Source: Octopus vulgaris
Taxonomy: Eukaryota
Assembly: GCA_951406725.2 (NCBI GenBank)
Contig: OX597823.1
Location: 26,060,001-26,308,000 of the forward strand
Length of the DNA: 248,000 bases
Reading direction: 5' to 3'
Shown: positions 24,375 to 128,304 of the stretch, piece after piece
Layout: each line of letters begins with the position of its first letter
Numbering within the stretch: position 1 is the first letter of the stretch
The notes under the pieces: model-generated
Databases searched by the model: none
Told to the model about the DNA's origin: nothing
Seen by the model: only the letters and a program-made list of their open reading frames with translations
Position numbers and translations under genes: made by a program

Positions 24375-26270
24375 CATCATCATCATCGTATAACGTCCGT
24401 TTTCCGTGCTAGCATGGGTTGGATGGTTCGACTGGGATCTGGGAAGCCAGGAGGCTGCACCAGGCTCCAGTCTGATCTGGCAGTGTTTCTACAGCTAGAT
24501 GCCCTTCCTAATGCCAACCACTCCATGAGTGTAGTGGGTGTTTTTTACGTGCCACTAGCACAGGTGCCAGGGGAGGCTGGCAGCGGCCACGATCGGTTGG
24601 TACTTTTTACGTTCCACCGGCACAGAAGCCAGTCAAGGCAGCGCTGGCATCAGCCTTGTTCGGATGTTGCTTTTTATGTGCCACTGGCACAGGTATCACA
24701 ACTACTATTTCTATTTGATATTCATTTTGATGTTGATGTACTTGACTCAATAGGTCTCCTCAAGCACAGCAGGTCACCCTACAATCCAAGGTAAGCACAG
24801 CAGGTCGTTCTGCAATCCAAGGTACTTTGGATGGGCTGAGGCTATGCAAAACTGGTGCAGGAAGCAGCTCAGGTCTTTGCAGTCACAGCATATCTCCAGA
24901 GATCTCGATCTTTCGTCATTACCTCTGTGAGGCCCAACGTTCGAAGGTCATGCTTGACTACCTTATCCCATATCTTCCTGGGTCTCCCTCTCCCCCTGAT
25001 ACCTTCAACTGCTTGGAGGTGGCACTTCTTCACATATCTCTCCTCATCCATCCGCAGTACATGACCATACCAGCACAAACGTCTCTCTTGCACACCACAT
25101 CTGATGCTTCTTATGTCCAGCATTTCTCTCAGGGCACTTACACTCTGTCGTATGTGCACACTGACATTACACATCCAGCGGATCATGCTAGCTTCATTTT
25201 TTTCAAGTCTACGCATGTCCTCTGCAGTCACAGCCCATGTTTCACTACCGTGAAGCATGGCAGTTCGCATGCATGCATCATACAATCTACCTTTCACTCT
25301 GAGCGAGAGACCCTTTGTCCCCAGTAGGGGTAGGATCTTTCTAAACTTTGCCCAGGCTATTCGTATTCTAGTGGTGACACTCTCTGAGCATCCACCTTCA
25401 CTACTAACTTGGTCACCTAAGTAGCGGAAACTATCAACTACTTCTGGTTTCTCCCCCTGGAGTGTGATGGAATCTGTTTTCTGAGTATCTGTGGTGTCTA
25501 TTGCCCCTGTGCATCTGCTGCACATGAAAGCTATCTTATCAGTTAATTTTCCTTTGATGTTGCTGCACCTCTTATGCATCCATAGCTTACACTGGGTACA
25601 TCTTATAGAGTTTCTACCTACACCTTTCCTACAGATCAAGCGGGACTACCTGCCCGAGGGGGTGGGTGATGAGTCCGCCTTTCAGCTTACTATAACTTTG
25701 GTCTTTGCTACATTTACTCTAAGGCCCTTTGATTCTAAACCTTGCTTCCACACCTGAAATTTCTTTTCTAGTTCCGGTAGTGATTCTGCTATGAGGGCCA
25801 GGTCATCAGCATAGAGTAACTCCCAGGGGCAACCCGTCTTGAATTCCTCTGTTATTGCCTGGAGGACTATGATGTATAAAAGGGGACTGAGGGGTGAACC
25901 TTGGTGGACCCCTACTTCTACCCGGAATTCTTCACTATACTCATTGCCAATCCTAGCCTTGCTGACAGCCTCTCTGTAAAGCCCTTATTAACCATTTGTC
26001 AATATCCAGTTTCCGCATCGCCCACCAGATAAGGGATCGGGGAACCCTGTCAAAAGCTTTCTCCAAGTCTACAAAAGCTATGTAGAGGGGTTTATCTTTA
26101 GCTAGGTATTTCTCCTGCAGTTGTCGAACCAGGAATATAGCATCAGTGGTGCTTCTACCCAGCACAAAACTGAACTGCATCTCATCTAAGCAAACTCTCT
26201 CCCTAATGAAATGGGCTATGACCCTCTCTGTGACCTTCATCATCTGATCCAACAGTTTAATACCCCTGTA
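24375..26270 (-). mobile_element. 5'-truncated RTE-clade LINE (RT, C-terminus, 3' UTR, (GAT)n tail)
   Basis: ORFs 25953-26525 (FVDLEKAFDRVP) and 24869-25639 (FRYLG, RL.WYGHVLRM); LYADDL on the minus strand near 25810; frameshifts. Confidence 0.92.
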
Positions 26271-26431
26271 GTATATATATATATTGGCTGGCAAATTGTT
26301 GTATTTTATATATAAGTAAGGTACAAAATAAGGTACATAATAATCACAGATAAAAATATTCACATACTTCCCATGTACATGCATACACATATACACAGGG
26401 TTCAAATGCTGCTTGATTTTTCTTCTCAGCG

Positions 26432-26960
26432 TTGAATATTCACCATCCCACTTCCATTGCACACACAACCACACACACAAACATTTACATGACTCCCTTT
26501 TATATACACACACACACATCATCATGCAGAGTTGAAATGCTGTTTGATTTTTTTTTTCACCATAGAACTTCCATCAACCCACAACCAGTTTGCCATCACT
26601 CCTTCCTTCCTTATTCATCTATCATCTCTTCCTTTCTCATTCATATGTTGTGATGGAAAAATACAGAGGAGTATTATTATAGTAGAAGATATGGAAGGTA
26701 AATTAAATTAATACACTTGTTTGACAAGTGTATTAATTTAATATAACTATATAGTATATATACTACAGAATCAAACACATGCATTCACATGCTTCCCTTG
26801 TACCTGCACACACATACACACATATACTCACACAGAGTTGAAATGCTGTTTGAATTTTCTTTTCAGCATTGAACATTCACCATCCCACTTCCATTGCACA
26901 CACACACACACACAAATACTCACACAGAGTTCAAATGCTGATTTTTTTTTCACCCCTTCC
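26432..26960. repeat. Local direct duplication (units at about 26432 and 26869)
   Basis: ttgaa.attcaccatcccacttccattgcacacac and gagttgaaatgctgtttga recur. Confidence 0.7.
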
Positions 26961-36299: not shown

Positions 36300-37979
36300 C
36301 AGGGATTGGACCAAATAATGGAAACACCTAGCATCATAATTTTGAAATATCTATAAAACCATCAAAAGCTTGTTTATTTTTATGTTTTCTGATTTATTAT
36401 TAGTGTTGCTTAATATGTTTTGCTAACATTGCTGTTTCTTTTCAGATATCATCAGAAAAAGGTAATTAAAATTCATTAAAATGACAGATCTATCGGACTT
36501 TCAAAGAGGTCAAATTGTTGGTGCTCGTATGGCAGGTGCTAGCATAACGAAAACAGCTGAAATGTTTGGTGTATCAAGAAGTACTGTCTCAAAAGTAATG
36601 ACAGCCTTTGAGAAAGTGGGAAAAACCTCCTTGTCAAAACAAAACTCTGGAAGAAAACCAAAACTTTCAGATAGGGATTGTTGGATTCTTACGCGAATCA
36701 TTAGAAAGGATCACAAAAGTACAGCTCCCAAAATTACTGCTTGTACTTGTACTTGTACTTACATTCACCCTGGGCGGGTTGAATCGGCTTCTTCTACCAC
36801 CCTCGAGGCATCTTGAACTATGGCAGTGGAAGAAATTTCGTGGGAATATGAATTTCACAAGCAGTCCCCAACAATCCCGCATGTAGAGACATCCTGTTTG
36901 CTGCAGATTGTCCGCAGATGCAGGGACAGAACGACCAAGGAGCCACCGGTTGCTGAAACAGACACTCCGAGGATTTTCACCAGAGCCCCGTCTGCCGGGT
37001 TGTGGACCTAATACCACTCGGTGTCAGACCAATCCGCCTTGGGTGGCCCAACCAGGAACCGAAGTTCCTGACGGCATAGCTCTGACACTACCCGTTGCCA
37101 GCGTCCCCACCACGGTGAGGAGGGGATGGGCAAAATTACTGCAGAGCTTAATGACCACTTTGAGAACCCAGTTTCCTCAAAAACTGTTGGCCAGGAGCTG
37201 CACAGAGCCAGATTTCATGGGAGGGCTGCAATCAGAAAACCACTACTTTCAAAAACAAACGTTGCAATGCATTTAGAGTGGAGTAAAAACCTACAGAATT
37301 GGTCCCTAGAGCAGTGGAAGAATGTTATTTTTTTGGACAAGTCATCCTTTACCTTATTTCCAAACACTGACCGAGTATACATGTGGAAACAGCCAAAAGA
37401 AGCATTTGACCCAGACTACCTTCTTCCAACTGTTAAACATGGAGGAGGATCTGTGGTGATCTGGAGGGGGGGGGGGGGCTATATCTTGGAAATCCGCTGG
37501 CCCAATAGTTTCCCTTCATGGCAGAATTAATAGTCAAGTCTATTTAAGCATTTTATCTGATCAAATTCATCCTATGGTTGTGGAACTGTTTCCAGAGGGA
37601 AATGCAATCTTTCAAGATGATTGATAATGTACCAATTCACACAACTAAAGTTGTTATTGAATGGCATGAGGAATATTCTAGTGAAGTTGAACATTTTATC
37701 TGGCCACCACAGTCCCCAGATCTCAATATTATTGAACATTTATGGTAAATTTTAGAAAAACAAGTAAGGAGTCGATATTCTCCACCATCATCACTACAAG
37801 AACTGGAGACTGTTTTAGTTGAAGAATGGACAAAAATTCTTTTGGAAACAATTCAAACTTTGTACGAATTCATACCTTGTAGAATTCAAGCTGTAATTAT
37901 TGCCAAAGGTGGTCCTACCCCATATTAAAATTAATTTGTTTGAAATTTTAAGGTGTTTCCATTATTTTGTCCAACCACA

Positions 37980-42170: not shown

Positions 42171-43445
42171 TTGTGTCATCCCATAAATAATGCAGTTTTT
42201 CAATTGCATGAACTAAAAGTCAAAGGGGGATAGGATTAACTACCTGCATCAACTTGCTATAAAAGCAGGTAGTAATTTTACCTTGTATATATTCTTAGTG
42301 TAAGTTTTGAAGAATGCTGTTCGATTTTAACAGTTATTTTTTTCAAAGTTATAATGGAAGTGACAAAGGAGCATATTCAGCATATTTTGCTTTATGAGCT
42401 CAATAAAGGCAACAACACAACGGAAAGTGCGCAGAATATTAATGCAATATATGGGGATCAAACAATAAGTGTAAGCCAGTTTCAACGGTGGCTCCAGAAA
42501 TTCCAATCCAGAGAATACAGCCAAGAAGATGAGCCTCATCCTAGAAAATATATAGAGCTTGATGAGGACATCCTGAAAATGCTGGCAGAACAAAATCCCA
42601 TTGCAAGTGTTGTAGAACTAGCAGAAAAGCTTGGATTTGGTCATTCAACCATTCATCGGCACCTGCGGGCCATCAGAAAAGTTGGCAAATTGGGTCAATG
42701 GGTTCCTCACAAAATTTCCAAGTCTAATCACGTGCAGAGTGTGATTGTGTGCTCTTGTTTGCTCTCACACCTCATGAATGAACCTTTTTTGGACTGAACA
42801 GTGACTGGTGATGAGAAATGGGTTTTCATTAAAAATGTCAAACACCAAAGGCAGTGTGTAGGTAAAGGAGAATCATTGGCAGCCCAGGCTAAAGAAGGTC
42901 TTCATCCACATAAGGTGTTGCTATCTGTTTGGTGGGATATGAAAGGTTTAGTCCACTTTGAACTTGTAAACCCAAACTAAATGATAAGAAAGGAAATCTA
43001 CTGTGAGCAGCTTAAGTCAGCACTAGAAGAAAAACAACCATCTTTGGTTTCAAGACAAAAGGTGTTCTTCCATCAGGATAATGCTCGGCTACATACAGTG
43101 AGGAGGATATTCCAAAGGCTGAAGCAGTTTGAATGGGAAACGATGCCCCATCCACCATATTCACCGGACATTGCCCCATCTGATTATCATTTATTCTGCA
43201 GTCTTCAAAATCATTTGGCCAAAAAAAGTATGAATTCTGGAGACAAGGTCAGAACAGTACTGGAGGAATATTTTTCGTGACTGACAAGTGAATTTTGGAA
43301 GAGGGGCCTTGAAAATCTACCAGATAGATGGAAGAGCATTGTAGAAAATGAAGGAGAGTATATTTTAAATTTAGAAAGAACTTTGGTTATCTTAATTATG
43401 AAAAATAAAAGAAGTATAAAAAAACTGCATTATTTATGGGATGAC

Positions 43446-51880: not shown

Positions 51881-52245
51881 CGAGGGGCATTCAATAAGTA
51901 ATGCCCCTGACCCACTTCCCATAGCAGTAGAGCAACGAAACTTGGCACAGTTATTAGTCTTTTTCTACATAGGAACCACCCAGAGTTACGCATTTCTGCC
52001 ATAGTTTGATGCAGCGCTGGAGACCGTTTTTGTAGAAGACCCCAGCTTGGTCTTCCAACCACAACGTGACTTTAGAAATCAAGGCTGCATCATCTGTGAA
52101 ATGCTTTCCTTTCAAAAAAAACTTCATGGCTGGGAAGAGGTGAAAATCAGAGGGTGCAAGGTCAGGAGCGTAGGGGGGATGGGGGAGGAGCTCTTAGCAG
52201 CACGCCTGTGCTTCTGATCTGGCGACACGCGAGTTGTGAACCGGA
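51881..52245 (-). mobile_element. mariner right-end fragment
   Basis: TA|CGAGGGGCATTCAATAAGT terminal repeat; minus strand encodes HPPYAPDLAPSDFHLFP. Confidence 0.8.
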
Positions 52246-60900: not shown

Positions 60901-62213
60901 AGAGGGTGTTACGGTTCAGGGTCAAAAGACCCAATCAATCGATCGTTGATGACATCAATTCCTTCTGGCCAATGCTCCCATTCACTTTGGTGAATAGAAA
61001 AGAAGCACCTTCTTTTAGGTGTTGGCAATAATATGTCTTGTGTAAAAAGAGGAAGAAGATAACTGATTAAGAAAAATGTAAACAAGATGGGAAAACGTTT
61101 TTATTTATATTTTTTTTTGAGGTGGGTTGGGGTTAACAGCTTGATTAGAGGGGTGAGTAGTACTCATAATCTTTTTCAGGCATATGTAACTGATGGGAGA
61201 AAGGGCTGAAGTTAGTGTCAGACCATGGCCCTGACCTGAACACTTTTAACAGAGTGAATTCTGTTAAAGGTACCCAATGACAGATGGTGGTATTAAACAT
61301 GGTGACATGTTAGGGTTAGTCATGTAGGAAATAATGTAGAATCTCAACTGGAAGAGCTGAGGTTGGTTGGAATCTAGATAAGACTAGAGGGTGTGTAAAG
61401 CCTGAAGAATTCAAGAAAAATGCCTTGAGAATAGAGAAGAAGAATTAAGAAACGGAAGAAAGTGCATAGAAAATTGTTTAGGTAGATGGATGAAAGTTTC
61501 AATATGGTTAAACAAGGTTTGGTATGGTTAGAGAATCAAACATAGAGTCTGGGACTGGATTTTACAGAACAGGAATAAACTCTGAAAATAAACTAAATCA
61601 TGTTCCATAGAGATACAACCATTGAATTTCCATTGTGGAAATGTGTAGCAAAATGAGCCAACAAGGGTCACTCATCCTGCTAGAAATAGTAGGTCGCTGC
61701 TTGTAAAGGCTTCTTCATTGGCTTATTGCTATTGATAATGATGGTGATGGATGACAGTAATGACAATGATGGTGGTGGTCGTCGTCGTGGTCGTGGTTGT
61801 GGTCGCAGTCTTGGTGGTGGTGGTGGTAGTGGCAATGTAGCAGTGGTGGGGATTGTGGTTATTGTTTAGATTCATGTCAACCCTGGTTGAGCAGAAATAT
61901 GATCAAAGACATTTCAGTTACGACTTTTTCATCATTTCTGCAGACATACTGTACCTAGGACTACATTATCCAATGTGTTCTCCCTTTTTCAAAACGGTAG
62001 GCTAGAAGTTGAGATTTGGTGGCTATTTCTAGCAGATCAAATGACCACACAATCTTCTTTCTTGTAATTTATGATTATTATTATCATTATTGTTGTTGTT
62101 GGATTTCAGATCCCATCTCATTGAACATACCTATGAATAAAAGCCTCCCAGCTATTACTGTTCCTTTTACTTTTACATACAAGGACTAAATACATTTGCC
62201 AATATCTATTCCT

Positions 62214-62432
62214 GGCAAGCTGGTAGAATCATTAGCATGCCGGGTGAAGTGCTTAGCAGTATCTCGTCTGCCATTATGTTCTGAGTTCAAATTCCGCTGA
62301 GGTCGACTTTGCCTTTCATTCTTTCGGGGTCGATTAAATAAGTACCAGTTACACACTGGGGTCGATGTAATCAACTTAACCCCTTTGTCTGTCCTCTATG
62401 TTCAGCCCCCTGTGGGCAATAAAGAAATAAAT
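62214..62432 (+). mobile_element. tRNA-derived SINE (family A), representative copy
   Basis: Head ggc..gctggcagaatc.ttagc...gagttcaaattcc; conserved core gcctttcatcctttcggggtcgataaa.taagtaccag. Other copies near 51640, 65512, 82340, 86745, 87017, 89447, 101210, 105775, 114570, 197350, 208690, 239400, 239610 and 240460. Confidence 0.85.
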
Positions 62433-62757
62433 ATTTATTCCCTTTTAGTAGGTTGTAATTGGAGAGAATTTGGTTGCTATTTCTAGCAGGCAAAACAATC
62501 ATATAGAGTCTCCTTTATTGGTTCAAGGTAAAGGCATGGTAATTTGTGATGGCAAAACAAGCAAGTTCTCAACTAGTAAAACCTGAAATTCTCACTACCT
62601 CTTCAGGTAGTCTGTTAAAAATGTCTCGTTAATAAGTCACACAGCTGTCACAAACCAGTTCAGGTCAGAATATTTGCTATATAGATAAAAGATTTTTTTT
62701 TAAAATAAAACTCTCTGACTGAAATCCATTTAGCCTTATATAGTTATATTTCTACCA

Positions 62758-62816
62758 AGTATCAAGTAATGTAATGACAGAAATGGTAAGCTGTTCACAC
62801 TTAGTGTCTTTGGTTA
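62758..62816. repeat. Perfect 59-bp inverted copy of 64917-64975 (exon end plus 5' splice site)
   Basis: Base-by-base reverse-complement identity. Confidence 0.95.
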
Positions 62817-64866
62817 CATCCATTTATAGGCACAGGATTGGCTGTGTGGTAAGAAGTTTGCTTCTCAACCACATGGTTCCAAGTTCTATCTCATTGTGTG
62901 ACACTTTGAGTAAGTGTCTTCTTTTATAGCCACAAACCAACCAAAGCCTTGTGAGTGGATTTCATAGACAGAAACTGAAAGAATTCTGCCACATATGCAT
63001 ATAAATATGTGTGTGTGTGTGTGTGTTAGTGTCTCTTTGTGAAGACATCATGTGATAGTTGTAAATGAGTGTCAGCATCACACACATGGTGTCCTTCATT
63101 TCTATTCTTCCATAGAAAACATCTGACCATGGGGAAATATTATCTTACCTGGAAGCATGTAAGGGTTGGTAACAGGAAGGGCATCCAATCAAAGAGATCC
63201 TGCCTCAGTAAATGCTGTCCAATCCATGTAAGCATAGAAAAGAGGACGTTAAGTGATGATGATTTATGTTCTAAACTTAAAAACCTGCGTTTTTTCATGG
63301 TTTCATCAGAGGTAGAATAGAACCCATAATTTTTTTCAAGTCCCCAGAGCTTGATAGAGAGAGAGAGGAAGAGAGGAAACTATTCATAGACCAGAGATTT
63401 GGCAATAATACGACCACAGAGAGGGTGCTATTAAAGGAATGCAAGGACAAGGTGATGCTGTTAAATTAAGCAATGAATTAAGTTGACCATTCCAAAACAA
63501 GATTGGTCTCTCTCTTTACCCTTACTCTTTTACTTGTTTCAGTCATTTGACTGCGGCCATGCTGGAGCACTGCCTTTAGTTGAGCAAATCGACCCCAGGA
63601 CTTATTCTTTGTAAGCCTAGTATTTATCCTATTGGTCTCTTTTGCTGAACCGTTAAGTTACAGGGATGTAAACACCCCAGCATCGGTTGTCAAGTGATGT
63701 GGGAGGTGGGGGACAAACACAGACACACACACATATACATGACGGGCTTCTTTCAGTTTCCGTCTACGAAATCCACTCACAAGGCTTTGATCAGCCCAAG
63801 GCTATAGTAGAAGACACTTACCCAAGGTGCCACGAAGTGGGACTAAACCCAGAACCAGGTGGTTGGTAAGCAAGCTACTTACCACACAGCCACTCCTACA
63901 CCTATGCAGTTTCTGTCCACTATATTTCACTTGTAAAGTTTTGGTCAATCTAAGGTTATGGTAAAAGACACATGCCCAATGTGCAACACAGCAAGATTGA
64001 ACCCAGAACCACATAGCTGTGGAATGAACTTCTTATCCACACAGCCATGTCTGCAACCACCTTAACTTTTCCTTGTTCTAGAGCCAAATGAAGGCAGTGG
64101 GTTTGCAAAATTGTTAGAGAGTTAGACAAAGTGCTTTGTAGTGTTTTTTCAGTCATTTTTACATTCTAATGTTAAATTCTGCTGAAAGGATTGATAAAAT
64201 GAAGTACCAGTCATGTATTGGTGTCAGTTGGTAGAGAGAGAGGAAGAGGGTGCTATTAAAGGAATGCAAGGACAAGGTGATACTGCCTATATCCATCCCA
64301 CCAAATTTGTAACCTAATGGCTCTGTTAGTAATTATTGTCTAAAGGTCAATAAAATAAGTAGCCAACTGCATCTTTCTCCCTCCACAATGATTTTTAGCT
64401 ATCTAAGAAGTCACTGTCATCACTTGGTATGGAAGATGCTTTGAGAACAAAATGGAAAAAAAAGAGAAAGCAGAAAAAATAAAACAATAAAAGTTTCTAC
64501 TCATATCTAATATAGCTTGTTGCCATTTATTGATATGGAACTTCAAGATAGCATCATGTACTGAACAGCAATATATGTTATTGTAATGAATTCCATCTAA
64601 CCCATGCAAGCATAAAAAAGTGGATGTTAAAACAATTTTGACAATTGTGATGGTGGTGGGGGTGATGAGGATGTTGTGTAGTCCTGGTCGGCACCATTTG
64701 CCCAGGTGTATGGCATATAGTCACTTGAATGACTAAGTGCTATTCATAGAACTAGTGTTCCAGATTTACTGTGATCCTCCACCTGCTTGACTACCCCTGC
64801 TGTATGGTGGTGTATGATATGAAGTGCAACATAACAGATAGAACTTGGAACCATGTGGTTGAGAAG

Positions 64867-64931
64867 CAAAGACACTAATCTAACCAAAGACACTAATCTA
64901 ACCAAAGACACTAATCTAACCAAAGACACTA
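64867..64931. repeat. 18-bp minisatellite (caaagacactaatctaac) x3.6
   Basis: Read directly. Confidence 0.9.
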
Positions 64932-64967
64932 AGTGTGAACAGCTTACCATTTCTGTCATTACATTAC

Positions 64968-65010
64968 TTGATACTGTATTTTCTCCACTGTCCAATCTGT
65001 TCCTGTATTC
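64968..65010 (-). CDS. Exon of unidentified minus-strand gene X: (R)NTGTDWTVEKIQYQ
   Basis: Acceptor ctttgtttcctcttacag|, donor |gtaatg; phase 2 in matches the phase 2 out of the 68117-68243 exon. Confidence 0.6.
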
Positions 65011-66789
65011 CTGTAAGAGGAAACAAAGTAGACTTGGTCAGAATGACAGTTGCTGTTTTTGTTTATAATATATTATAAATGCTGTAGAAACTAGAAACTG
65101 ATGGCATGTCACAAGGATGGCAGCAGTAGAAAATATCTGCAAAGATGTCTACTCTTTTGGTTTTCAATTTAAAAACGCTTTTTGCTTTGTGGAATGATAG
65201 CACAGTTTCTAACTTGTGTTTTGAGTTAACTAGGGAGCACCTATGGCGTCATTTGACCCACTAGAAAAAGTAGTCAAATCTCCCTCAAATCCCTCTTTGC
65301 TGTCTTTAAAAAGAAGGGGAGGATATATTGAATAGTGTAATGCTAGATGTTATAAGAAAATGGGAGAGTTGTGGGCTGGGATTCCTTTGGTCAAAGATTG
65401 GCTGAGTAGGATTGACTAGGGTTAAAAAACATGATTTAACTGAGAGATTACCTTCATCCTTATCTTCCTCCTCTTCATCATCATTGTAGTTTTAATGTTT
65501 ACTTTCACATAAGGTGGTGAGCTGGTAGAAACATTAGCACGCCGGGTGAAATGCTTAGTGGTATTTCATCTGTCTTTACGTTCTGAGTTCAAATTCCGTT
65601 GAAGTTCACTTTGCCTTTCATCCTTTTAGGGTCGATAAATTAAGTACCAGTTGCTTACGGAGGTTGATCTAATTGCCTGGTCCCCTCCCCTAAAATTTCA
65701 GGCCTTGTGCCTAGAGTAGAAAAAAATGTTTACTTTGCATGCTTGCATGGGTCACATAAAACTATATTAGGGTAGTGTTTTCTAAGATTGGATGCCACCC
65801 ACTTGTTTCCAAGTGAGACAATGATATCCCAGTCTACCAAACAACAAATAGTTTGGACATGTTTACTGGGAGAACTAGAAACAAACAACACCATAAGAAT
65901 AAAGCTTTTTGTTGATAAAGATCATACAACATGTTAAAACATGTCAAAAAGCCAGGACATGCTTTCATGGTGGAGTGCAAGCAAATCACTGAAGCCATTG
66001 TTTAAAATCAGCAAATGAACACATGTAAACAAGAAAATATGAACTCACTCATATGTGCACACATACAAGTGGTTGTTTTCAGTTTCCATTTACCAAGTCT
66101 TTGGTCAGCCTATGGCTATAGTAGAAAATATTTGCCTAAGGTGCCATGCAGTAGGACTGAACCTGAAACCATATATTTGGGAAATAAACTTCTTAGGCAC
66201 ACAGCCATGCCTTTTATTTTACAAATGTCACAAGTTTCATGCCATCATTTTGTGCTTGTCTGTTTGCTTCAAAAAGATTCTTCTTCAAATAATGACTTTT
66301 ATTAAGAAATGTTTTGTCATGTCATCAGGTTAGCATCATGGAACAAGAATGGTTCAGCTCCAGACTATAAATCATTGAGAAGAATTACCTGGAGACACCA
66401 TCTGCAATAAACATAATAACTGAATAAATGTTATCATGCATAATGTAGTGAGAACAACAAAAAAAAGTCAATTAATTAAAGTTACATTTCCTCTGAAGAG
66501 AAGTGTTAACATAGGATCCATAACTAATGTTAAAAATAGTGGATCTGTTTGGTTTGGTTGCCAGCATTTCAAAAATCAAAGTTTATTAAAAAATTTTTTA
66601 TGTGGCACATTAGTATACTTTTCCAAGCTGAATTGCTGGAGCTATTTCACTTTTTCCAGGAAAATGTTTTTAAAAAGTTATAGAGGTTTAAAGTTCGATC
66701 ATTTCCACCCAGTCAGGAAACAGGATTTGGAAGCTGTCATTTTGTGCATGACTGCACATTTTGTCAACATCCTGGGAATAGCACATATT

Positions 66790-67000
66790 GTCAAGAAAGA
66801 GTAAACAACATGCCTTTTGTAGTTTTAAGCATTATGATAGCATGAGATTTATCCAAAACGTTTTTAGGTATAACACCCTTTTCTTGTAGGTATGACACAG
66901 TATCCTCCTCTGTTCTTTGTGTCCCCACCACAGAAGCAAGTTTACCAGAGCTTGCTGCCATAATCAAACAGTATAATTTCCAACAGAACACAGCATCAAA
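66790..67000 (-). mobile_element. Possible Merlin/ISXO2-like transposase N-terminal remnant
   Basis: EEDTVSYLQEKGVIPK resembles Merlin N-termini (from memory); the flank is related to 55790-56400. Confidence 0.35.
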
Positions 67001-80556: not shown

Positions 80557-82976
80557 CTTTAGTATTATTAAGCTTATAAGTTGTGCTCCATGGACAGCTA
80601 AGGAGGGTACTCAGTCACTGATGAAATCCCAACACAAGATTAAAACTAGTCCAGTTCATTGCCCTTTTTCTGCTCATGGAGATATTCTATACAAAGACAA
80701 GATATTTACATCTGTCTATTACATACAGGTTTGGCTTAAGTCTAAAAAATATAGATTTTTTTTTTTATATAGATTAAACATACCACATTGTAGTATTGTA
80801 TGAAACTAGATAATGGAGTCTTAGAAATAGTATTTATAAAAAGAAAATAGGATGATTATAGTTGGAACATCTTTTATTATAGGTCTGATTGATTAAGGAA
80901 GATTTAGAGTTAAACAACACTAAAACATCAATAGCAATATGAAAGCAAATGGTGTGATAGTGCCATTTAGTCAACCTCATATCTACTGATTAGTTAATAT
81001 TATAGTGTGATAGTTTATAGTTTTCTCATAAATATATTTTACATTCTTTCTTATATTATCAACACAGCCTGCTCTACAGAGTGGTTGGTGTTAGGAAGGG
81101 CAACCAGCTGTAAAACTATGCCAAAGCAGACACAGAAGCATGGTGCAGGCTCCTGCCTGGCCAGCTCCTGTCAAACCATCCAATCTATGCCAACATGGAA
81201 AGAGGACATTAAATGATGATGATGATGATGATGATAGTGTGCTACTTATTGTCATTAGGCACAGGTGTTAGTAAATTATTAGATATTTGCTCACAGGTTT
81301 TGATCTCACTGTACATAAAGCAGCAGAAATTCTGGTAGTGTGCCAATTTTGCCAATCCAATACCTTGAAATATGTGCTAAAATGCTAGAGGTTTATTGGA
81401 TTAAATATACATAGTTTTAAATTTATTGTAGAATACTGAACTTAAATTATGTTCTTAGCTGCCGAAGCATCTGAAAGGCGCTATTTTCTTACATTAATCA
81501 CAACATTGGGGTTGTGATAAGAGAAAAAGAGATAGAGAGGATATAAAAACAGTTCATGCCATTTGACAAACATATGTGGCTCTTTACAAAATATCAACAT
81601 GACTCAAGGTTGTGCCACCAAGTTTAGACTTAAATTTGTCCTTACAGTCTAGAACGGGATTTCCTAACAGTTGTGAAAGGTAGGAGAGTCCAGTTTGCTG
81701 GACATTGTTGTAGAGCTGAAAGCGAGACAATTTCTACTCTTCTCCTCTGGAAGCCATCTACTCGCAATACCAGAGGGCGCACACTCTCCTACCCTGATGT
81801 AATCTCCAGGTATACAGGCATCCAGCAACAGGACCTCCGTAATGCTGGCGTAGCATGGTAAATTCCATTGTCTCGACCACGGTCGAACAATGATGATGAT
81901 GATGAACAGTTAAAGTGAGGGATAAATAGATTAACAGAAAAACATGTTACCTCATATTATTATTAATGAGGACTTTTCAAAATTTTACAGATGGGCTTCA
82001 GATCAGTTTTAAAAGTTTCTAAAATTAAAATCCAGAATCTGAAGAAAATGGTAAGAATTTGAATCAGTAAAATGGTATTAAACCTTTTGTTATCCACCCA
82101 GCTGAAACCGGTTCTGGCTCTGAGTACAAATGCCTTGTTTTCAAAGTTTTGAATTAAAATCTTCCACCAAAGCTTAGTAACAATTTACATTCCTAACACT
82201 AGCTGAATAATAACTAAGTTATTTTACTAAATTCTTTGTTATATTTAAAGTAATTGAAAGAAACATAAAGCATCTCAAAATAAATACAGTAATGAAAGGG
82301 TTAAACATCAAAAGATAGATATCAATCGGTTTGGTTACCACAAGGCTGGCAGAATTGGTAGCACTCCAGACAAAATGCTTAGTGATATTTCATTTGTCTT
82401 TATGTCTTGAGTTCAAATTTCAATGAGGTTGACTTTGCCTTTCATCCTTTCAAGATCAATAAAGTAAGTACCAGTTGATTGCTGGAGGGGTTGATATAAT
82501 TGACTTAACTCTTCCCTTGAAATTGCTGACCTTGTGCCAAAACTTGAAACCAATAAGTTTGATTACTATGAGAACATGAAGAGTGGAAAAACTGATTTTT
82601 TTTTTACAGAAACTTTATGCCAAATATTGCATTTTTTTCTCTTTTCTTGCAGCTTTTATGACAGACATTTGTTTTACAGTTAGCATATGAATTTAAAGAT
82701 TAAATTTATCTGTTGATTTTTTTTCTTTTATATTGTACCAGATATTCACATATATTTTGCTTATATTTTAATTCGTTTTCCTAAAATTCTTGCCAGGCGA
82801 TGCTAAATCTGCAATTATGTTGAAATGGTTCTAGTATTTTCATTTTTTGTTCTTTGTTTGACTATAAATTATGAAAAATAGCACAGTTTGAAAGTATTCA
82901 ATGGAGTGTTAGTATGATTCAGCAAACACTTTATGCCCACCCAAAGAGATGTATTTCACTGGTGTTACTGGAGGAG

Positions 82977-83019
<43 letters not shown>

Positions 83020-83022
<3 letters not shown>

Positions 83023-86000
83023 GAAGTTCTTGAGGCCTTCTACCATGCCATATATTTCCCCACAGATAAATCTAACACTGTACAAACATACTTAAACTGG
83101 AGACAGAAACACTCTGAAGTAAGACCCTACATAGACAGTAAGAAACTTGCCAACATCAGAAGAAATATTATAAAAAAAAAATTACTGACTGAAGTAGAGA
83201 TTGATCAAGTTAGACAAGCAATATCAGATAAAATGAACGAAGCTGCAGCTAGAGAAGATAATACAAAGGAAATAATTATAGACCAGCCCAGGGCTGATAA
83301 AAACGAAGTAAAGATTGAAAGAGTTAGTATAAGTGATAGGCAAAGTGAAATACTCCCTGAACCAATCATAAACACTAAGACAGATGAACAAATAGATAAA
83401 GAAAGTCACACAAATATTGACCCAACAGAACTACATGAGCTAAAAAATCAAATCATGATTGAATGGCTGAAAATTAAAGAAACCAGTATGGATGAACGTG
83501 ATGCACTCCCTAAAATCCGCAACTCTAACCAAAACATGAAAATAATTGGTAAAATCCAGCTTGCACTTAAGGATATAATTTCAGCTAATGATGATGATAT
83601 CACAAATCTCAACCACCTATACTATGCATCCGCGAAAATCTCAACGATCCTATGTGGTGTAAAGATTAGAAAACGGCAACATTCCCACAAAAAGCCTTCT
83701 TGGCAAGAGCGTCTGCAACAACAAATTAAACTATTTAGATCTGACATTGAATATTTAAAAAACCTTAAGGTTCACAAGACTACCAAACCTACAAAAACCA
83801 AAAAATTACTGAAAAAATACAATATGAAAACTATACTTGATATCGATGCCACCATAGAAACCATCAAACAAAAAGGTATCTGCCAAAGCTGCCCGCATAG
83901 CGAGGTATGAAAAGCATGTTAGATTTTTCAAGGACAACAACATGTTCAAAAATAATACCAAGAATTTTTACAGGAAGATAGGAAAAACAGCGTTTACTGC
84001 AAGGTCTGTACCATCAAAAGAAGAAGTGCAGGGATTTTGGAATAAAATTTGGGCAGAAGAAAAAACACACAACGAAAAGGCCCCCTGGATTGACAGAATA
84101 TCTACAGAACTGGACCTCTTAGAAGAGCAAAAGTGGGAGGGTGTCAAGGTAGAAGATATAAGATCTGCTCTCAGGAGGTCAAGCAAATGGAAGTCTCCAG
84201 GAAAGGATAAAATTCCTAACTTCTGGCTGAATGACTTCCCAGAGAGCCATGAACTGCTAACAGAACTTCACAATGATGTTTTGCAACATCCTAGTAGGAT
84301 ACCTCCTTGGCTAGTTAATGGGTTAACATTCCTGCTTCCAAAAAGTGAAGAAACAAATGAACAAAAAAACTATAGACCCATAACCTGCTTAACAACTATG
84401 TATAAAACGCTAACATCTGTCCTGACGGAATATACTTATAGCTTTTTAACAGACAGTAGCATATTCCCTAATGAACAGAAAGATGTAAACGTGGATCCTA
84501 CGGCTGTAAAGATCAACTACTCATCAATAAGTTGATCTTAGAAGATTGTCACAAACGACACAAAAACTTATCAATAGCCTGGATAGACTATAAAAAGGCA
84601 TTTGATAGCCTACCACATAGCTGGATTAGGAAATGCCTTGAAATGTATAAGATAGCACCTACTCTGCGAAACTTTTTCACTGTAAGTATGAGATCATGGA
84701 GAACCACACTAACTCTGAACAGTGACAATGAATCCCTAAATGCTGGTGATGTAAAAATTGTGTGTGGCATTTTCCAGGGTGACTTTTGTTTAGCCTTAAT
84801 ACCTCTCTCAAAACTGCTCAATGACGCGCAGTACGGGTATAAAATGTTTGATAAAAATATAAATCATCTCATTTACATGGATGATTTAAAGCTTTTTGCA
84901 AAAAATGACCAACAACTCAAGGGCTTACTAGCGATAGTCAAACAATTCAGTGATGACATCAGAATGCAATTCGGCCTCGATAAATGTGCAAAAGCTACCT
85001 TTATCAAAGGAAAAATGACAGAAACATCTAATGTTAACCTTGACCAGCAGAATGTCATAAAAGAACTAGACCCAGCAGAGAGCTAGAAGTACCTAGGGGT
85101 AATTGAAGGGAACGGAATAAGGCATTCAGAGATGAAGGAAAGGATCAGAAGAGAATGTTATCGAAGAGTGAGAGCAATACTCAAGACAGAGCTGAATGCA
85201 AGAAACAGGATCGAAGCGATCAATGCATTAGCCATACCAGTCGTGACTTACAGTTTCAATATCGTTAATTGGTCAATTACTGAAATATGTCAGCTCAACA
85301 GAAAAATAAGAAAACTGTTGACAATGCATAGAATGCACCACCCTAAGGCAGATACAGAACAACTTTATCTGCCAAGAAAAGAGGGAGGCCGTGGTCTTTT
85401 GCAACTGGCAATAACAATGAAGATTGCTACAATTGGCCTAGACACCTACCTGAAAAAGTCTGAGGACTGGATGTTAAAACTTGTCTCAAAACATGAAAAC
85501 AAGAAAGCATCATACTCAGTAACAAAACAGGCAAAGGAATATCTAAGTGAATTCCGAATACAACAAATTTCGGAATTAGAGATAGACATACAAGAAACAA
85601 GCACAGAAAAAGCTAGGCGCATAATAACTCGTGCCAAAACTGCGGCCTTAGATATTCTGAATAATAAATGGCAAGAAAAACCTCTCTATGGCAAATACCC
85701 AAAGAGAGCGAATAATGCAGATATTGACAAAGCCCTGACCCATCAATGGCTAATGGCCTCTGGCTTAAAATCTGAAACAGAAGGGTTTATCATAGCAGCT
85801 CAAGATCAATGCCTACCAACAAGAAACTACCAGGCCAACATATTAAAGAATGGCAGTAGCCCAACATGTCGTGTATGCCAACAACAAAATGAAACCATTG
85901 ATCATGTTGTCTCCAAATGCAGTCTTCTAGCGCCTACAGAGTACCTCAACAGGCATGATAGAGCTGCACAATATATTCACTGGGTAATTTGCAAAAACCT

Positions 86001-86620
86001 GGATTTGCCCCATGAAAAAAACTGGTGGGAACACAATCCACCTCCAGTGCTTGAAAATGACCACATCTCACTCCTCTGGAACTTCACCATTCAAACTGAC
86101 AGAAAGATAGATGCAAATAGGCCAGACATCATATTGAAAGACTTCAGACAAAGAACATGCCTCCTCATTGATATGACTGTCCCAATCGATATAAACGTAT
86201 CTGTCAAGACCTACCAAAAACTGAGCAAATATAAAGATCTTGAAATAGAAATCAGCAAAATGTGGAACCTGAAGACTAAAACAATACCTGTTGTCATAGG
86301 TGCCCTGGGAATGATAGCAAAAGGGGCTGATTGCTACCTAACTCAGATACCAGGAAACCCCAAAATGGCAGAAATTCAAAAGATAGTGCCTATGGGAACT
86401 GCTCATATCCTACGCAAAATACTCTCTATGTAATCCCAAGGTTTAAAACAATTTTTTTTTTTTATGTATTAGACATTCACTAGTACAACACCCCAAAAAA
86501 TCAAATATATGGCACACTAGGCATAACGACAACGTGAACTTCCAGCCTGTTGTCTCTTGAGGTCTCTGGGTGAGACTTGTACAACCAACTTGTACAGACA
86601 TAAAGCAAAAGTCAAACATA
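83020..86620 (+). mobile_element. Near full-length R4/Dong-clade non-LTR retrotransposon (RT, CCHC, restriction-like endonuclease) inside (AAT)n
   Basis: [57 protein letters not shown]. Two frameshifts (about 83880 and 84490), a small deletion after QGD and a stop at 85084-85086; (AAT)n on both sides. Confidence 0.93.
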
Positions 86621-87709: not shown

Positions 87710-87875
87710 CGGGACCAGCCATTTGAATGTGGCTAGGGACAGGGCGGGGTGGTGGGGGTGTTACTGATGCATTTAGCCCCAGGCGACTATAGACGTCACC
87801 AGGAGAGCCGACACCATCACGGTGTCCTTGCTAGCCTGCAAAGGGAGATCAGCCTCCCTGAAGATACGAATGCTA

Positions 87876-87917
87876 CACACGGACCGGTTTCGAGGTATTG
87901 CCTCTCGTCAGCGCATG
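87876..87917 (-). ncRNA. Minimal type-I hammerhead ribozyme, copy 1
   Basis: CATGCG-CTGACGA-GAGG caata CCTC-GAA-ACCGGT-C-CGTGTG: intact core, GUC site, palindromic stem III. Confidence 0.88.
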
Positions 87918-88234
87918 GCAAACACCGTTCTTCGTTGAGGGACTTCCTCTACAGGCTAGAAATATATAGATTTTCACTGTAAACACAGTCACTGGCGTTG
88001 AAAATCTGTTCGATAACAATAATAAATCTCTAAGCGAGGTATAAACAGTAACTGCTCTGTAATATAAGCGGGACCAGCCATCTGAATGTGGCTAGGGACA
88101 GGGCGGGGTGGTGGGGGTGTTACTTATGCATTTAGCCCCAGGCGACTATAGACGTCACCAGGAGAGCCGACACCATCACGGTGTCCTTGCTAGCCTGCAA
88201 AGGGAGATCAGCCTCCCCGAAGATACGAATGCTA

Positions 88235-88276
88235 CACACGGACCGGTTTCGAGGTATTGCCTCTCGTCAGCGCATG
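88235..88276 (-). ncRNA. Minimal type-I hammerhead ribozyme, copy 2
   Basis: Identical to copy 1, 359 bp away. Confidence 0.88.
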
Positions 88277-88576
88277 GCAAACACCGTTCTTCGTTGAGGG
88301 ACTTCAAGGACACCATGATGGTGTCGGCTCTCCTGGTGACGTCTATAGTCGCCTGGGGCTAAATGCATAAGTAACACCCCCACCACCCCGCCCTGTCCCT
88401 AGCCACATTCAGATGGATGGTCCCGCTTATATTACAGAGCAGTTACTGTTTATACCTCGCTTAGAGATTTATTATTGTTATCGAACAGATTTTCGACGCC
88501 AGTGACTGTGTTTACAGTGAAAATCTATATATTTCTAGCCTGTAGAGGAAGTCCCTCAATGAAGAACGGTGTTTGC

Positions 88577-88618
88577 CATGCGCTGACGAGAGGCAATACC
88601 TCGAAACCGGTCCGTGTG
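88577..88618 (+). ncRNA. Minimal type-I hammerhead ribozyme, copy 3 (inverted arm); predicted cleavage after C88612
   Basis: Reads directly on the + strand: catgcg ctgacga gagg caata cctc gaa accggt c cgtgtg. Confidence 0.88.
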
Positions 88619-88937
88619 TAGCATTCGTATCTTCGGGGAGGCTGATCTCCCTTTGCAGGCTAGCAAGGACACCGTGATGGTGTCGGCTCTCCTGGTGACG
88701 TCTATAGTCGCCTGGGGCTAAATGCATCAGTAACACCCCCACCACCCCACCCTGTCCCTAGCCACATTCAGATGGCTGGGCTTATATTACAGAGTAGTTA
88801 CTGTTTATACCTCGCTTAGAGATTTATTATTATATATATATATATATATATAAATGTCAGTGTACATGTACAAATTGATCCTTCTGACACCAAACCCAAC
88901 TGAGTTCCTTCATTCTATGATAAAAATCCCTCTATTT

Positions 88938-96965: not shown

Positions 96966-96992
<27 letters not shown>

Positions 96993-97005
<13 letters not shown>

Positions 97006-97326
97006 AAATGAAGAAAATGCTGACAAATAATTGAAGTAATTTAAGTAATTTAATTAGGTGAAAGTTCTTTTTACCGGTTGCGCATTTGTTATGCTTATCA
97101 AAATATAAAAGAGAGATTAGAGTTCCTTTCTTATAGAATTTTTCCTCTTATTTTTCCTCTTATCAGATAAGAGGAAAAATTCTATAAGAAAGGAACTCTA
97201 ATCTCTCTTTTATATTTTGATAAGCATAACAAATGCGCAACCGGTAAAAAGAACTTTCACCTAATTAAATTACTTAAATTACTTCAATTATTTGTCAGCA
97301 TTTTCTTCATTTCCTTTTTTATATAT
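96993..97326. repeat. Long near-perfect palindrome (arms about 160 bp, 1-nt loop)
   Basis: Centre cttatc-a-gataag; only a 12-bp duplication breaks the symmetry. Confidence 0.92.
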
Positions 97327-98600: not shown

Positions 98601-99490
98601 TTGGGTTGGCAACTAAGTTCTTACTGTTTTTTTAAATTTAAATTTTTTAAAAGGTTTAATAAAAAATAACAACTAATTAATCAATAATGTATTCACCCTT
98701 ATTGTTTACAACTTATTCCCAATGTTTAACAAGGTTTTCAACACCTGTTGGTAGAAATCACCCGATTTCGAATAAAAAAATTGATCCAACCAAGCTCTCA
98801 ATTCTGCATTATTGAACGAAACTCCGCACATAGTATTTGAAAGAGATTGAAAGAGGTGGAAATCTGTTGGTGCCAAATGAGGAAAAATTATTGGGTTGGC
98901 AACTAAGTTCCTGCCGTTTTTTAAAATTTTGGAATTTATTGCGTTTTTAAATTTTGGAATCTATTTTTCTCGAGAATTCTTTTTCTGAATCATTTTGGAA
99001 TCTATTTTGTTTTTTTTTCTAGTTAATTTTAGTTAATTTTTGTTTATTTTCAGATCATTAAAATGGAATGTCAAGTTAAGAAAAATGAGCATTTTCAACA
99101 CCTCTTTCTTTTTGCTTTTAATCAAGGTTCTAAGGCCGCAAAAGCTGCTTGCAACATTTGTGCTGTGTATGGAGAGGGTGCCATAGCTGAGAGAACCACT
99201 CGTGATTGCTATGCCAAGTTCAAAAATGGAAATTTTGACCTCAAAGACGCACCTCGTTCTGGCCGTCCAGTTGAGTTCAATGAAGAGCAAATAAACCAAC
99301 TTTTGGACGAAAATTCTCGTCAGACAACAAGGGAACTGGCAGAGAAAATGGAATGCTCCCACACTAGTATAGAGAAGTATCTTCACTCAATGGAAAGGTT
99401 CAGAAGTATGGAGCATGGGTTCCGCATGCTTTAAGTGACAACAACAAAAATCAATGAGCCACAATCTCTGCTGGTTTGCTTGCTTGTCAC
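98601..99490 (+). mobile_element. Two adjacent mariner fragments of one family
   Basis: TA|TTGGGTTGGCAACTAAGTTC at 98601 and 98891; ORF 99063-99434 is a mariner HTH domain (DAPRSGRP). Confidence 0.88.
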
Positions 99491-103250: not shown

Positions 103251-103311
103251 TAGAGGAGAATGCTTTTTTACATATACTCTGAAGAAGACAAACCTTATTG
103301 ACCTAGAAATA

Positions 103312-127988: not shown

Positions 127989-128069
127989 ATAAATATTAGG
128001 GAATAAATCCAAATTTACAGGGAAAAATCAGATTTAGGATTGAATCCAATTTTATAGTAAAATATAATA

Positions 128070-128272: not shown

Positions 128273-128304
128273 TATATATATATATATATATACATACATA
128301 CATA

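What the first reader, a model, noticed from the sequence alone, without database searches (positions are those of the whole stretch)
62758..65010. Perfect 59-bp intronic inverted copy of an exon end and its 5' splice site
62758-62816 is the exact reverse complement of 64917-64975. That span covers the last 8 nt of a gene X exon, its donor (gtaatg) and a second strong donor 20 nt downstream (gtaagc), whose use would include a TAA stop. In the minus-strand pre-mRNA the two segments, 2.1 kb apart, could form a perfect duplex over the splice sites. This resembles an editing-complementary sequence; A-to-I editing is extensive in coleoids (established). The sequence is not a recognisable transposon. 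An 18-bp minisatellite at one edge suggests a recent template-switch origin. Function is inference.
Basis: partly seen in the sequence, partly recalled or inferred. Interest (0 to 1): 0.75.

Follow-up and report, generated by a model that had tools for sequence, protein, structure and literature searches.

The report
Local inverted DNA copy in octopus
A 140-base patch of octopus non-coding DNA was copied backwards from a spot next to a SINE 2 kb away, most likely by a replication or repair slip, which left a perfect 59-base inverted repeat; I found nothing to show that it touches a real exon or has a function.

Summary
62758-62816 is the exact reverse complement of 64917-64975, and chance does not produce this. 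The window is Octopus vulgaris OX597823.1:26,060,001-26,308,000.

The repeat is larger than reported. A second perfect 35-nt block (62857-62891 / 64836-64870) lies inside a tRNA-derived SINE and carries that copy's private substitutions. The left side holds the complete SINE. The right side holds only SINE positions 38-72, and an 18-bp x3.7 minisatellite joined through a TTTG microhomology replaces the SINE head. So the right arm, the supposed "exon end + donor", is most likely the derived copy. A second templated patch in direct orientation (64233-64281, AGAG junction) lies nearby.

This is the signature of microhomology-mediated template switching, which is an ordinary kind of mutation.

"Gene X" is unsupported:
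- the first donor is weak
- there is no coding signal
- no Pfam family matches
- no protein of 78-775 aa in a 5.8-billion-cluster database contains the exon peptide in any frame

If the region is transcribed on either strand, the RNA would form a 59 + 34 bp duplex (-101 kcal/mol) and would be hyper-edited. That is a consequence, not a shown function. Four other loci in the window also hold near-perfect complex inverted repeats. Interest is low.

The parts
62758..62819 (+). Left arm, the inferred source. It is unique sequence lying immediately 5' of a SINE: 59 nt perfect plus 3 nt with one mismatch.
62826..63030 (+). Full-length tRNA-derived SINE ('family A') ending in (TG)n. It holds the 35-nt source block 62857-62891.
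   Evidence: The family has about 30 copies in the window at 74-88% identity over matches of 40 nt or more. Alignment and consensus.
62857..62891 (+). Source of the 35-nt perfect block, SINE positions about 38-72. By my reading of the consensus it departs from the family consensus at 9 positions.
63358..63460 (+). Source of the second patch, in direct orientation. It is two pieces, 63358-63373 and 63420-63456(-63460), 46 nt apart.
   Evidence: (41 nt, 98%)
63713..63905 (-). Inverted SINE-A copy inside the loop. It is 74% complementary to 62826-63018 over 193 nt and forms a nested duplex in the predicted RNA fold.
   Evidence: I1; 50-bp helix
64233..64285 (+). Templated patch in direct orientation: the two source pieces joined across a 4-nt AGAG overlap.
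   Evidence: 16-nt and 37-nt exact matches; shuffles give 0.25 matches of 12 nt or more
64836..64870 (-). Isolated 35-nt internal SINE fragment, 100% identical to the left SINE copy. The SINE head and tail are absent here.
   Evidence: (no SINE tail: score 9.5 against shuffle mean 8.9)
64867..64932 (-). 18-bp minisatellite, 3.7 copies. Its unit re-copies arm positions 62801-62816. It joins the SINE fragment through a shared TTTG, which skips 44-48 nt of the source (SINE head plus spacer).
64917..64975 (-). Right arm, the inferred derived copy. It is the exact reverse complement of 62758-62816.
64968..65010 (-). Putative 43-nt 'gene X exon', unverified. The acceptor tttgtttcctcttacag is good. 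The donor CAA|gtaatg (64967-64962) is weak and ATG|gtaagc (64947-64942) is strong.

Best explanation
The inverted repeat is the scar of a small local templated insertion. A DNA end or stalled nascent strand at the right site (about 64835/64976) switched to the opposite strand 2.1 kb away. It copied about 134 nt there: part of an old SINE plus the unique sequence just upstream of it, 62891 down to 62758. On the way it jumped once across a TTTG microhomology, which skipped the SINE head, and it slipped repeatedly over an 18-nt unit, which made the minisatellite. It then returned to its own template. A second patch copied in direct orientation (64233-64281, AGAG junction) comes from the same process and perhaps from the same event.

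This is microhomology-mediated template switching of the FoSTeS/MMBIR or polymerase-theta templated-insertion kind. The 59-nt perfect inverted repeat is a by-product. The splice-donor-like hexamers in it are chance motifs that were copied along with the rest.

Consequence (inferred): any transcript that runs through both arms, on either strand, would fold into a 59 + 34 bp clamp around a 2.1-kb loop that already holds an inverted SINE pair. Such an RNA would be a substrate for promiscuous ADAR hyper-editing, and possibly for dicing. It would not be a substrate for site-selective recoding.

Shown: the anatomy, the identities, the microhomologies and the predicted fold.
Inferred: the direction of copying, the mechanism and the absence of function.
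For: - Both blocks are exact (59 nt and 35 nt) and occur only twice each in the window within 3 mismatches.
- The 35-mer departs from the SINE consensus at 9 positions. None of the about 30 other copies comes within 3 mismatches, so the two arms share one SINE copy's private history.
- The left site has the whole SINE in register, with head, block and tail running on to (TG)n. The right site has only positions 38-72, and nothing SINE-like follows (9.5 against 8.9 +/- 1.4). Retrotransposition does not produce an internal SINE fragment. Copying from the left site does.
- Junctions: TTTG is shared between the minisatellite unit and the SINE block. AGAG is shared at the junction of the direct patch.
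- The minisatellite unit is a re-copy of 62801-62816.
- No homology extends beyond the patch on either side.
- There are no transposon features and no Rfam or tRNA match.
- Four other loci in the same 248 kb hold near-perfect complex inverted repeats, so inverted copying is common in this sequence.
- Small templated inverted insertions and short-range template switches are documented mutation classes (PMC11724301, PMC7954356).
Against: - I could obtain no outgroup sequence and no reads, so the direction and the single-event reading rest on parsimony.
- The outer flanks resemble each other in direct orientation: TATATTTCTACCA / TATTTTCTCCA, P = 0.005 against random flank pairs. The model does not predict this, and it looks like a decayed target-site duplication.
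- Just inside the 35-nt block the arms still match 10/14. This could mean an older, longer duplication.
- Zero differences in 94 nt does not prove the event is very recent. With 0.44% O. vulgaris-O. sinensis divergence over 2.5 My (PMC10700109), the 95% upper bound on age is about 18 My. With the faster repeat clock of PMC13282606 it is about 4 My.
- Lack of function cannot be shown from sequence.
Confidence: 0.65

Rival explanations
1. The arms lie in the pre-mRNA of a minus-strand gene. The right arm is the genuine 3' end of an exon with its 5' splice site. The intronic left arm pairs with it, acts like an editing-complementary sequence or a splice-site mask, and so regulates editing, donor choice or exon skipping.
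For: - The predicted minus-strand RNA does pair the arms: a 59-bp helix, -101 kcal/mol.
- The 43-nt segment has a good acceptor and is open in all three frames.
- A strong donor-like site lies inside the duplex.
- An upstream ATG...CTG|gtaaac at 66961 would join in phase.
- Editing is abundant in octopus, and mostly in dsRNA formed by nearby inverted repeats (10.1101/2020.01.19.911685).
Against: - There is no evidence that the exon exists. The first donor is weak and the codon scores are non-coding.
- No protein of 78-775 aa shares three 5-mers with any frame, or with the MAASSG-joined model. This database does hold the window's own zinc-finger protein.
- No Pfam hits nearby, and no other credible exons in 30-110 kb on this strand.
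- The right arm is the derived copy, so the 'exon end' would be evolutionarily new.
- Only 8 exonic nt are paired.
- A perfect long duplex belongs with hyper-editing, a class distinct from site-selective editing (PMC5663115).
Confidence: 0.05
2. An older and longer inverted duplication of [unique sequence + whole SINE]. Either site could be the original. It was later trimmed at the right site by two deletions and a minisatellite expansion, and the perfect blocks were possibly kept identical by gene conversion.
For: - 10/14 residual similarity just beyond the 35-nt block.
- At octopus substitution rates, 94 identical nt allow an age of several My (PMC10700109).
- Other loci in the window show long near-perfect inverted duplications.
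Against: - It needs at least three further events, each leaving zero substitutions in the retained 94 nt.
- No inverted homology remains between 64000-64835 and 63030-64000.
- No trace of a SINE tail at the right site.
- Both internal junctions carry microhomology, as expected of one copying process.
Confidence: 0.12
3. A 2.2-kb non-autonomous DNA transposon or foldback-type element (62758-64975) with 59-62-nt terminal inverted repeats, a subterminal minisatellite and a decayed target-site duplication of about 11 bp.
For: - The inverted repeats lie exactly at the ends of the segment.
- The abutting flanks are similar in direct orientation, P = 0.005.
- There is a subterminal tandem repeat on one side.
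Against: - There is no exact abutting repeat of even 2 nt.
- The flank repeat has two indels in 13 nt while the 'TIRs' have 0 differences in 59. That pattern is not expected if both date from one insertion.
- No other copy of the arms in 248 kb.
- No transposase or other Pfam hit in the ORFs tested in or beside the segment.
- The inner part of the right 'TIR' is a piece of the neighbouring SINE copy with its private substitutions. A transposon end would not carry that.
Confidence: 0.05
4. An assembly or polishing artefact. The 140-nt patch was introduced by a chimeric ONT read or by mis-polishing and does not exist in the animal.
For: - The assembly is ONT-based (NextDenovo, Hypo polishing with 10x Illumina and ONT; PMC10700109).
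- Perfect identity is what an artefact would give.
- Several other perfect palindromes lie in the window.
Against: - The patch is a mosaic with a deletion, a 3.7-unit minisatellite and one base difference relative to its source. That looks like a biological copying error, not a read chimera.
- Fold-back read chimeras produce read-scale palindromes, not a 140-nt patch 2.1 kb from its source (my knowledge, not tested).
Confidence: 0.06

Closest known systems
Microhomology-mediated template switching: short-range template-switch mutations, FoSTeS/MMBIR, and templated inverted insertions at breaks (PMC7954356, PMC11724301)
   Same: A copy of nearby sequence in inverted orientation. Several switches in one patch. 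Junction microhomologies of 4 nt. Slippage. Creation of a new hairpin-forming inverted repeat. A second templated patch close by.
   Different: The patch (140 nt) and the distance (2.1 kb) are larger than the roughly 5-34-nt inverted insertions reported at yeast breaks, and larger than typical short-range switches. They are smaller than the kb-Mb events described for FoSTeS/MMBIR. The mechanism is inferred from the scar only.
Inverted SINE/Alu pairs in transcripts, the main substrates of ADAR hyper-editing in metazoans including octopus (10.1101/2020.01.19.911685; PMC5663115)
   Same: Two nearby reverse-complementary segments of 50 nt or more and 80% identity or more that would form intramolecular dsRNA. 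One such SINE pair (62826-63018 / 63713-63905) lies inside the loop.
   Different: The 59-nt arms are unique sequence, not a repeat family. They are perfect, whereas old SINE pairs are about 74% complementary. Transcription of this locus is unknown.
Editing-complementary sequence (ECS) of site-selectively edited exons, e.g. the GluA2 Q/R site (my knowledge; the paradigm is cited in PMC5663115)
   Same: A downstream sequence complementary to a segment that would include the end of a (putative) exon.
   Different: Only 8 putative exonic nt are paired. The duplex is perfect and long rather than imperfect and site-directing. No exon, no edited site and no conservation has been shown. The supposed exon end is the copy, not the template.
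TIR DNA transposons, MITEs and foldback elements
   Same: Inverted repeats at the ends of a 2.2-kb segment. A subterminal tandem repeat. A weak resemblance between the flanks in direct orientation.
   Different: No exact target-site duplication. Single copy in 248 kb. No transposase. One arm contains a fragment of the neighbouring SINE copy.

Membership tests
Templated insertion by microhomology-mediated template switching | The inserted sequence is identical or near-identical to a nearby template, in direct or inverted orientation | tested here: met
   59-nt and 35-nt exact inverted matches 2.1 kb away. 16-nt and 37-nt exact direct matches about 0.85 kb away.
Templated insertion by microhomology-mediated template switching | Short microhomology at the switch points | tested here: met
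   TTTG at the internal jump of the inverted patch and AGAG at the internal jump of the direct patch. The outer junctions cannot be scored without the ancestral sequence.
Templated insertion by microhomology-mediated template switching | Derived state: an empty site in relatives or other individuals | not testable with these tools
   Only +/-10 kb around a called gene can be fetched from O. sinensis. ORFs over the arms are not on record.
Editing-complementary sequence (ECS) | Pairs with an expressed exon that contains a specific edited adenosine | tested here: inconclusive
   The exon is unverified. No protein of 78-775 aa contains its peptides. The 775-1970 aa range is ambiguous. Codon score is non-coding. 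The first donor is weak. No RNA data are available.
Editing-complementary sequence (ECS) | Duplex centred on exonic sequence, imperfect, directing site-selective editing | tested here: not met
   51 of the 59 paired nt are downstream of the putative exon, and the duplex is perfect.
Editing-complementary sequence (ECS) | Both partners conserved across species | not testable with these tools
   No orthologous sequence could be obtained. The anatomy suggests the right arm is a derived copy.
TIR DNA transposon / MITE / foldback element | Target-site duplication abutting both terminal repeats | tested here: not met
   No exact abutting direct repeat of 2 nt or more at offsets 0-2. There is only an imperfect 11/13 resemblance, P = 0.005.
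TIR DNA transposon / MITE / foldback element | Several copies in the genome | tested here: inconclusive
   No other copy in the 248-kb window within 3 mismatches. The rest of the genome could not be searched.
TIR DNA transposon / MITE / foldback element | Transposase, or ends shared with an autonomous element | tested here: not met
   No Pfam hit in the ORFs tested in or beside the segment. The interior consists of SINE copies and unique sequence.
Inverted-repeat dsRNA (hyper-editing substrate) | Reverse-complement match of 50 nt or more at 80% identity or more within a few kb (operational criterion of 10.1101/2020.01.19.911685) | tested here: met
   59-62 nt at 98-100%. The spacing of 2.1 kb is just beyond that paper's +/-2 kb search window. 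The predicted fold keeps the helix.
Inverted-repeat dsRNA (hyper-editing substrate) | Both arms are transcribed in one RNA, and clustered A-to-G mismatches are seen | not testable with these tools
   No RNA-seq is accessible.

The most novel reading that the evidence does not exclude
The patch was inserted into a transcribed region. By chance it created a new 5' splice site (ATG|gtaagc or CAA|gtaatg) that is, from birth, locked in a perfect 59-bp duplex with its own template 2.1 kb downstream. Use of the new exon end would then depend on ADAR hyper-editing or helicase unwinding. That would be a newborn, editing-gated splice site caught at its origin in a coleoid.
Probability: 0.03. Interest if true: 0.6.

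Novelty: new member of a known kind. Interest (0 to 1): 0.15.

Why it matters
As it stands, it matters little. It is a clean, well-resolved example of how a single copying error creates a perfect long-range inverted repeat in unique sequence, next to a SINE, in a genome where inverted repeats feed an unusually active RNA-editing system. Events like this are the raw material from which dsRNA structures, including editing and splicing regulators, could later be recruited. For the scan the useful result is negative: the 'exon end + splice site' reading is not supported, the direction of copying is probably the reverse of what the title implies, and near-perfect inverted repeats are common in this window.

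Tried and rejected
1. Identifying gene X.
- I scanned stop-to-stop ORFs, splice-site-bounded ORFs and codon log-odds on the minus strand over 30-110 kb. Nothing looked protein-like apart from transposon relics.
- The only clear host gene in the window is a 690-aa zinc-finger ORF at 194 kb on the plus strand.

2. Database test of the exon.
- I ran three X-padded queries holding all three frames.
- Two runs were clean negatives. The third carried a positive-control peptide. It returned 9 word-sharing candidates, none listed, so it validates the word stage but leaves proteins of 775-1970 aa undecided.

3. Fetching the O. sinensis orthologue or independent assemblies.
- I looked up exact ORFs over the arms and a nearby ATG-ORF. 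None is on record.
- Only the distant zinc-finger locus could be fetched. I used it to calibrate divergence.

4. An old SINE at the right site, which would have explained an in-register junction by SINE-SINE homology. Rejected: no significant SINE tail.

5. A longer duplication. Rejected for lack of flank homology.

6. Transposon ends. No exact TSD.

7. Known RNA families and tRNAs. Only two Rfam matches, both far below their gathering scores, and no tRNA.

8. The flanking SINE-B pair (62213-62384 / 65515-65686) as part of the structure. Rejected: its 86% identity is ordinary for that family.

9. Pfam on the ten longest neighbouring ORFs. Nothing reached threshold.
Full report
**Where the window comes from.** A 690-aa zinc-finger ORF at 194131-196203 (+) is on record in two assemblies. 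The locus fetched from Octopus vulgaris GCA_951406725.2 (OX597823.1:26,244,131-26,266,203) is 100% identical to window 184131-206203. The window is therefore OX597823.1:26,060,001-26,308,000, and the finding lies at 26,122,758-26,124,975. The assembly is ONT-based (NextDenovo, polished with Hypo using 10x Illumina and ONT reads; PMC10700109).

**The observation.**
- 62758-62816 is the exact reverse complement of 64917-64975 (59/59). It runs to 62 nt with one mismatch.
- Within three mismatches the 59-mer occurs only at these two places, with none expected by chance.

- The inverted homology resumes after a gap. 62857-62891 is the exact reverse complement of 64836-64870 (35 nt).
- This block lies inside a tRNA-derived SINE. 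The window holds about 30 copies of it, at 74-88% identity to the left copy over matches of 40 nt or more.
- By my reading of the family consensus, the 35-mer departs from it at nine positions. No other copy comes within three mismatches. So the two arms share the private history of one SINE copy.
- The left site carries that SINE complete and in register: head, the 35-nt block, then the tail running on to (TG)n at about 63030.
- The right site carries only SINE positions 38-72. What follows is not SINE (local score 9.5 against 8.9 +/- 1.4 for shuffles), and nothing further is homologous.
- In place of the SINE head and spacer, the right site has the minisatellite. Its unit is a re-copy of arm positions 62801-62816, and its last partial unit merges with the SINE block through a shared TTTG.

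**Direction and mechanism.**
- Retrotransposition does not produce an internal 35-nt SINE fragment. A left site restored exactly in register by an insertion is also implausible.
- The economical reading is that the 140-nt stretch 64836-64975 was templated from 62891-62758 on the opposite strand. It involved one microhomology-mediated jump (TTTG, skipping 44-48 nt) and repeated slippage over an 18-nt unit.
- A second patch 550 nt away shows the same style. 64233-64281 is 63358-63373 joined to 63420-63456 across a 4-nt AGAG overlap, in direct orientation and with all bases identical. Shuffles give 0.25 exact matches of 12 nt or more between these regions.
- This is the scar expected of microhomology-mediated template switching or templated insertion during repair, both documented classes of mutation (PMC7954356, PMC11724301).
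But the supposed 'exon end and 5' splice site' are most probably the copy, not the original.

**Age.**
- O. vulgaris and O. sinensis differ by 94 substitutions in about 21.5 kb around the zinc-finger gene, which is 0.44%. They split about 2.5 My ago (PMC10700109).
- At that rate two copies of 94 nt acquire 0.17 differences per My. Zero differences therefore only bound the age at about 18 My (95%).
- With the faster repeat clock of PMC13282606 (JC 0.065 at 18 My) the bound is about 4 My.
- 'Recent' is true relative to the SINE family. It need not mean species-specific.

**Is there an exon?**
- On the minus strand, 65010-64968 has a good acceptor. Its donor CAA|gtaatg scores about 0 on a metazoan donor matrix, while ATG|gtaagc scores 5.1.
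- The strict splice scan (acceptor and donor scores >3, repeat filter) lists only 3 candidates in +/-15 kb. An acceptor-donor pairing like this one is therefore about what chance gives.
Random stop-free 14-codon segments average -1.6 +/- 3.6, and the zinc-finger gene averages 3.9.
- No credible neighbouring exon turned up on this strand between 30 and 110 kb. The ten longest neighbouring ORFs hit no Pfam family.
- I queried the 5.8-billion-cluster protein database with all three frames of the exon, with the 63-nt variant, and with a model joined in phase to an upstream ATG (66961, MAASSG|gtaaac). This database does contain the window's own zinc-finger protein.
- No protein of 244-775 aa or 78-246 aa shares even three 5-residue words with any of them.
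- A third run, for 619-1970 aa, included a 14-aa control peptide from the zinc-finger protein. It produced nine word-sharing candidates, none of which was listed. That shows the word stage works, but it leaves proteins above 775 aa undecided.
- These padded queries are unconventional. They say nothing about non-coding or unannotated transcripts.
- Overall the exon is unverified, and every available indicator is negative or neutral.

**What the repeat would do.**
- Folding the 2361-nt minus-strand RNA (65060 to 62700) gives an MFE structure that contains the 59-bp helix and a 34-bp helix between the arms. It also contains a nested duplex between the two inverted SINE copies in the loop, 62826-63018 and 63713-63905. 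The two arms alone pair at -101 kcal/mol.
- The same would hold for a plus-strand transcript.
- Across metazoans, octopus included, most A-to-I sites lie in dsRNA made by nearby inverted repeats (10.1101/2020.01.19.911685). Hyper-editing of such repeat-derived duplexes is a class distinct from site-selective editing (PMC5663115); that long perfect duplexes are edited promiscuously is my own knowledge.
- So if the locus is transcribed, I expect clustered hyper-editing of both arms as a passive consequence.
- An ECS-like role is not supported. Only 8 putative exonic nt are paired, the duplex is perfect, and no edited site or conservation is known.

**How unusual is it?** Not very, in this sequence. 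A scan for exact inverted matches within 20 kb finds other complex perfect blocks of 59 nt or more at four loci:
- 87715-88779: 475-nt arms, 99%
- 96992-97326: 160-nt arms, 100%
- 116895-117694: nested arms, 96-98%
- 128067-128275: 101-nt arms, 99%

All four are embedded in (TA)n or (TAA)n runs. The present case differs in its long spacer and mosaic structure.

**Alternatives.**
- A TIR transposon is unlikely. There is no exact target-site duplication, no second copy in 248 kb and no transposase, and one 'terminal repeat' contains a piece of the neighbouring SINE.
- One loose end keeps the transposon reading alive at low probability. The flanks abutting the arms resemble each other in direct orientation (TATATTTCTACCA / TATTTTCTCCA, P = 0.005 against random flank pairs). 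The template-switch model does not predict this.
- A longer, older inverted duplication trimmed by later deletions cannot be excluded without an outgroup. The 10/14 match just inside the 35-nt block could be a remnant of it, or it could be the imperfect homology used for strand invasion.
- An assembly artefact cannot be excluded without reads. However, the mosaic patch, with a deletion, a base difference and a minisatellite, looks biological.
- Rfam gave only two matches, both far below their gathering scores, and the tRNA search found nothing.

**Verdict.** The inverted repeat is real and far beyond chance. It is best explained as an incidental scar of local template switching that copied sequence from beside a SINE into a site 2.1 kb away. 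The exon, splice-site and ECS interpretation is not supported, though it is not strictly excluded. This is a new instance of a known kind of mutation, and its interest is low unless RNA data show that the patch created a used splice site.

Noticed in passing
window 87715-88779; 96992-97326; 116895-117694; 128067-128275: Four near-perfect palindromes, each embedded in (TA)n or (TAA)n microsatellite. Arms are 101-475 nt at 96-100% identity, with spacers of 7-412 nt. They could be foldback or MITE-like elements that target TA repeats, hairpin-primed duplications at AT repeats, or ONT assembly artefacts.
   Followed up: partly
window 194131-196203 (+): Single-exon 690-aa C2H2 zinc-finger ORF, the only clear host gene I found in the window. 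The protein is identical in O. vulgaris (OX597823.1) and O. sinensis (CM016867.1). No Pfam hit is on record for it.
   Followed up: partly
window 62745-62757 and 64977-64987: The flanks abutting the two arms resemble each other in direct orientation (TATATTTCTACCA vs TATTTTCTCCA; P = 0.005 against random flank pairs). This is TSD-like but imperfect, and the favoured model does not explain it.
   Followed up: partly
window 82918-86430 (+); 24872-26573 (-); 237766-238782 (+): Long ORFs of LINE-type retrotransposons, some reading like reverse transcriptase. The copy at 82.9-86.4 kb has nearly intact ORFs of 330, 225, 203 and 448 codons and may be young. Classified by eye only.
   Followed up: no
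window 36466-37527 (+), 42276-43277 (+), 51957-52193 (-), 98709-99431, 103298-104429 (-), 166722-167039 (-): Several decayed Tc1/mariner-type transposase relics, recognised by eye from motifs such as PHPPYSPDLAPSDYHLF.
   Followed up: no
window 66791-66961 (-): A 56-codon ATG-ORF (MAASSGKLASVVGTQRTEEDTVSYLQEKGVIP...) lies 1.8 kb upstream of the putative exon. Its first 16 nt end in a donor-like CTG|gtaaac that would join the putative exon in phase. It has no Pfam hit, is not on record as a gene product, and may be what suggested 'gene X'.
   Followed up: partly
L001 vs L002 (O. vulgaris vs O. sinensis, 22 kb around the zinc-finger gene): Only 0.44% substitution divergence, but 69 gap openings in about 21.5 kb. 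Indels are nearly as frequent as substitutions between the two assemblies, which may partly reflect long-read assembly errors.
   Followed up: no
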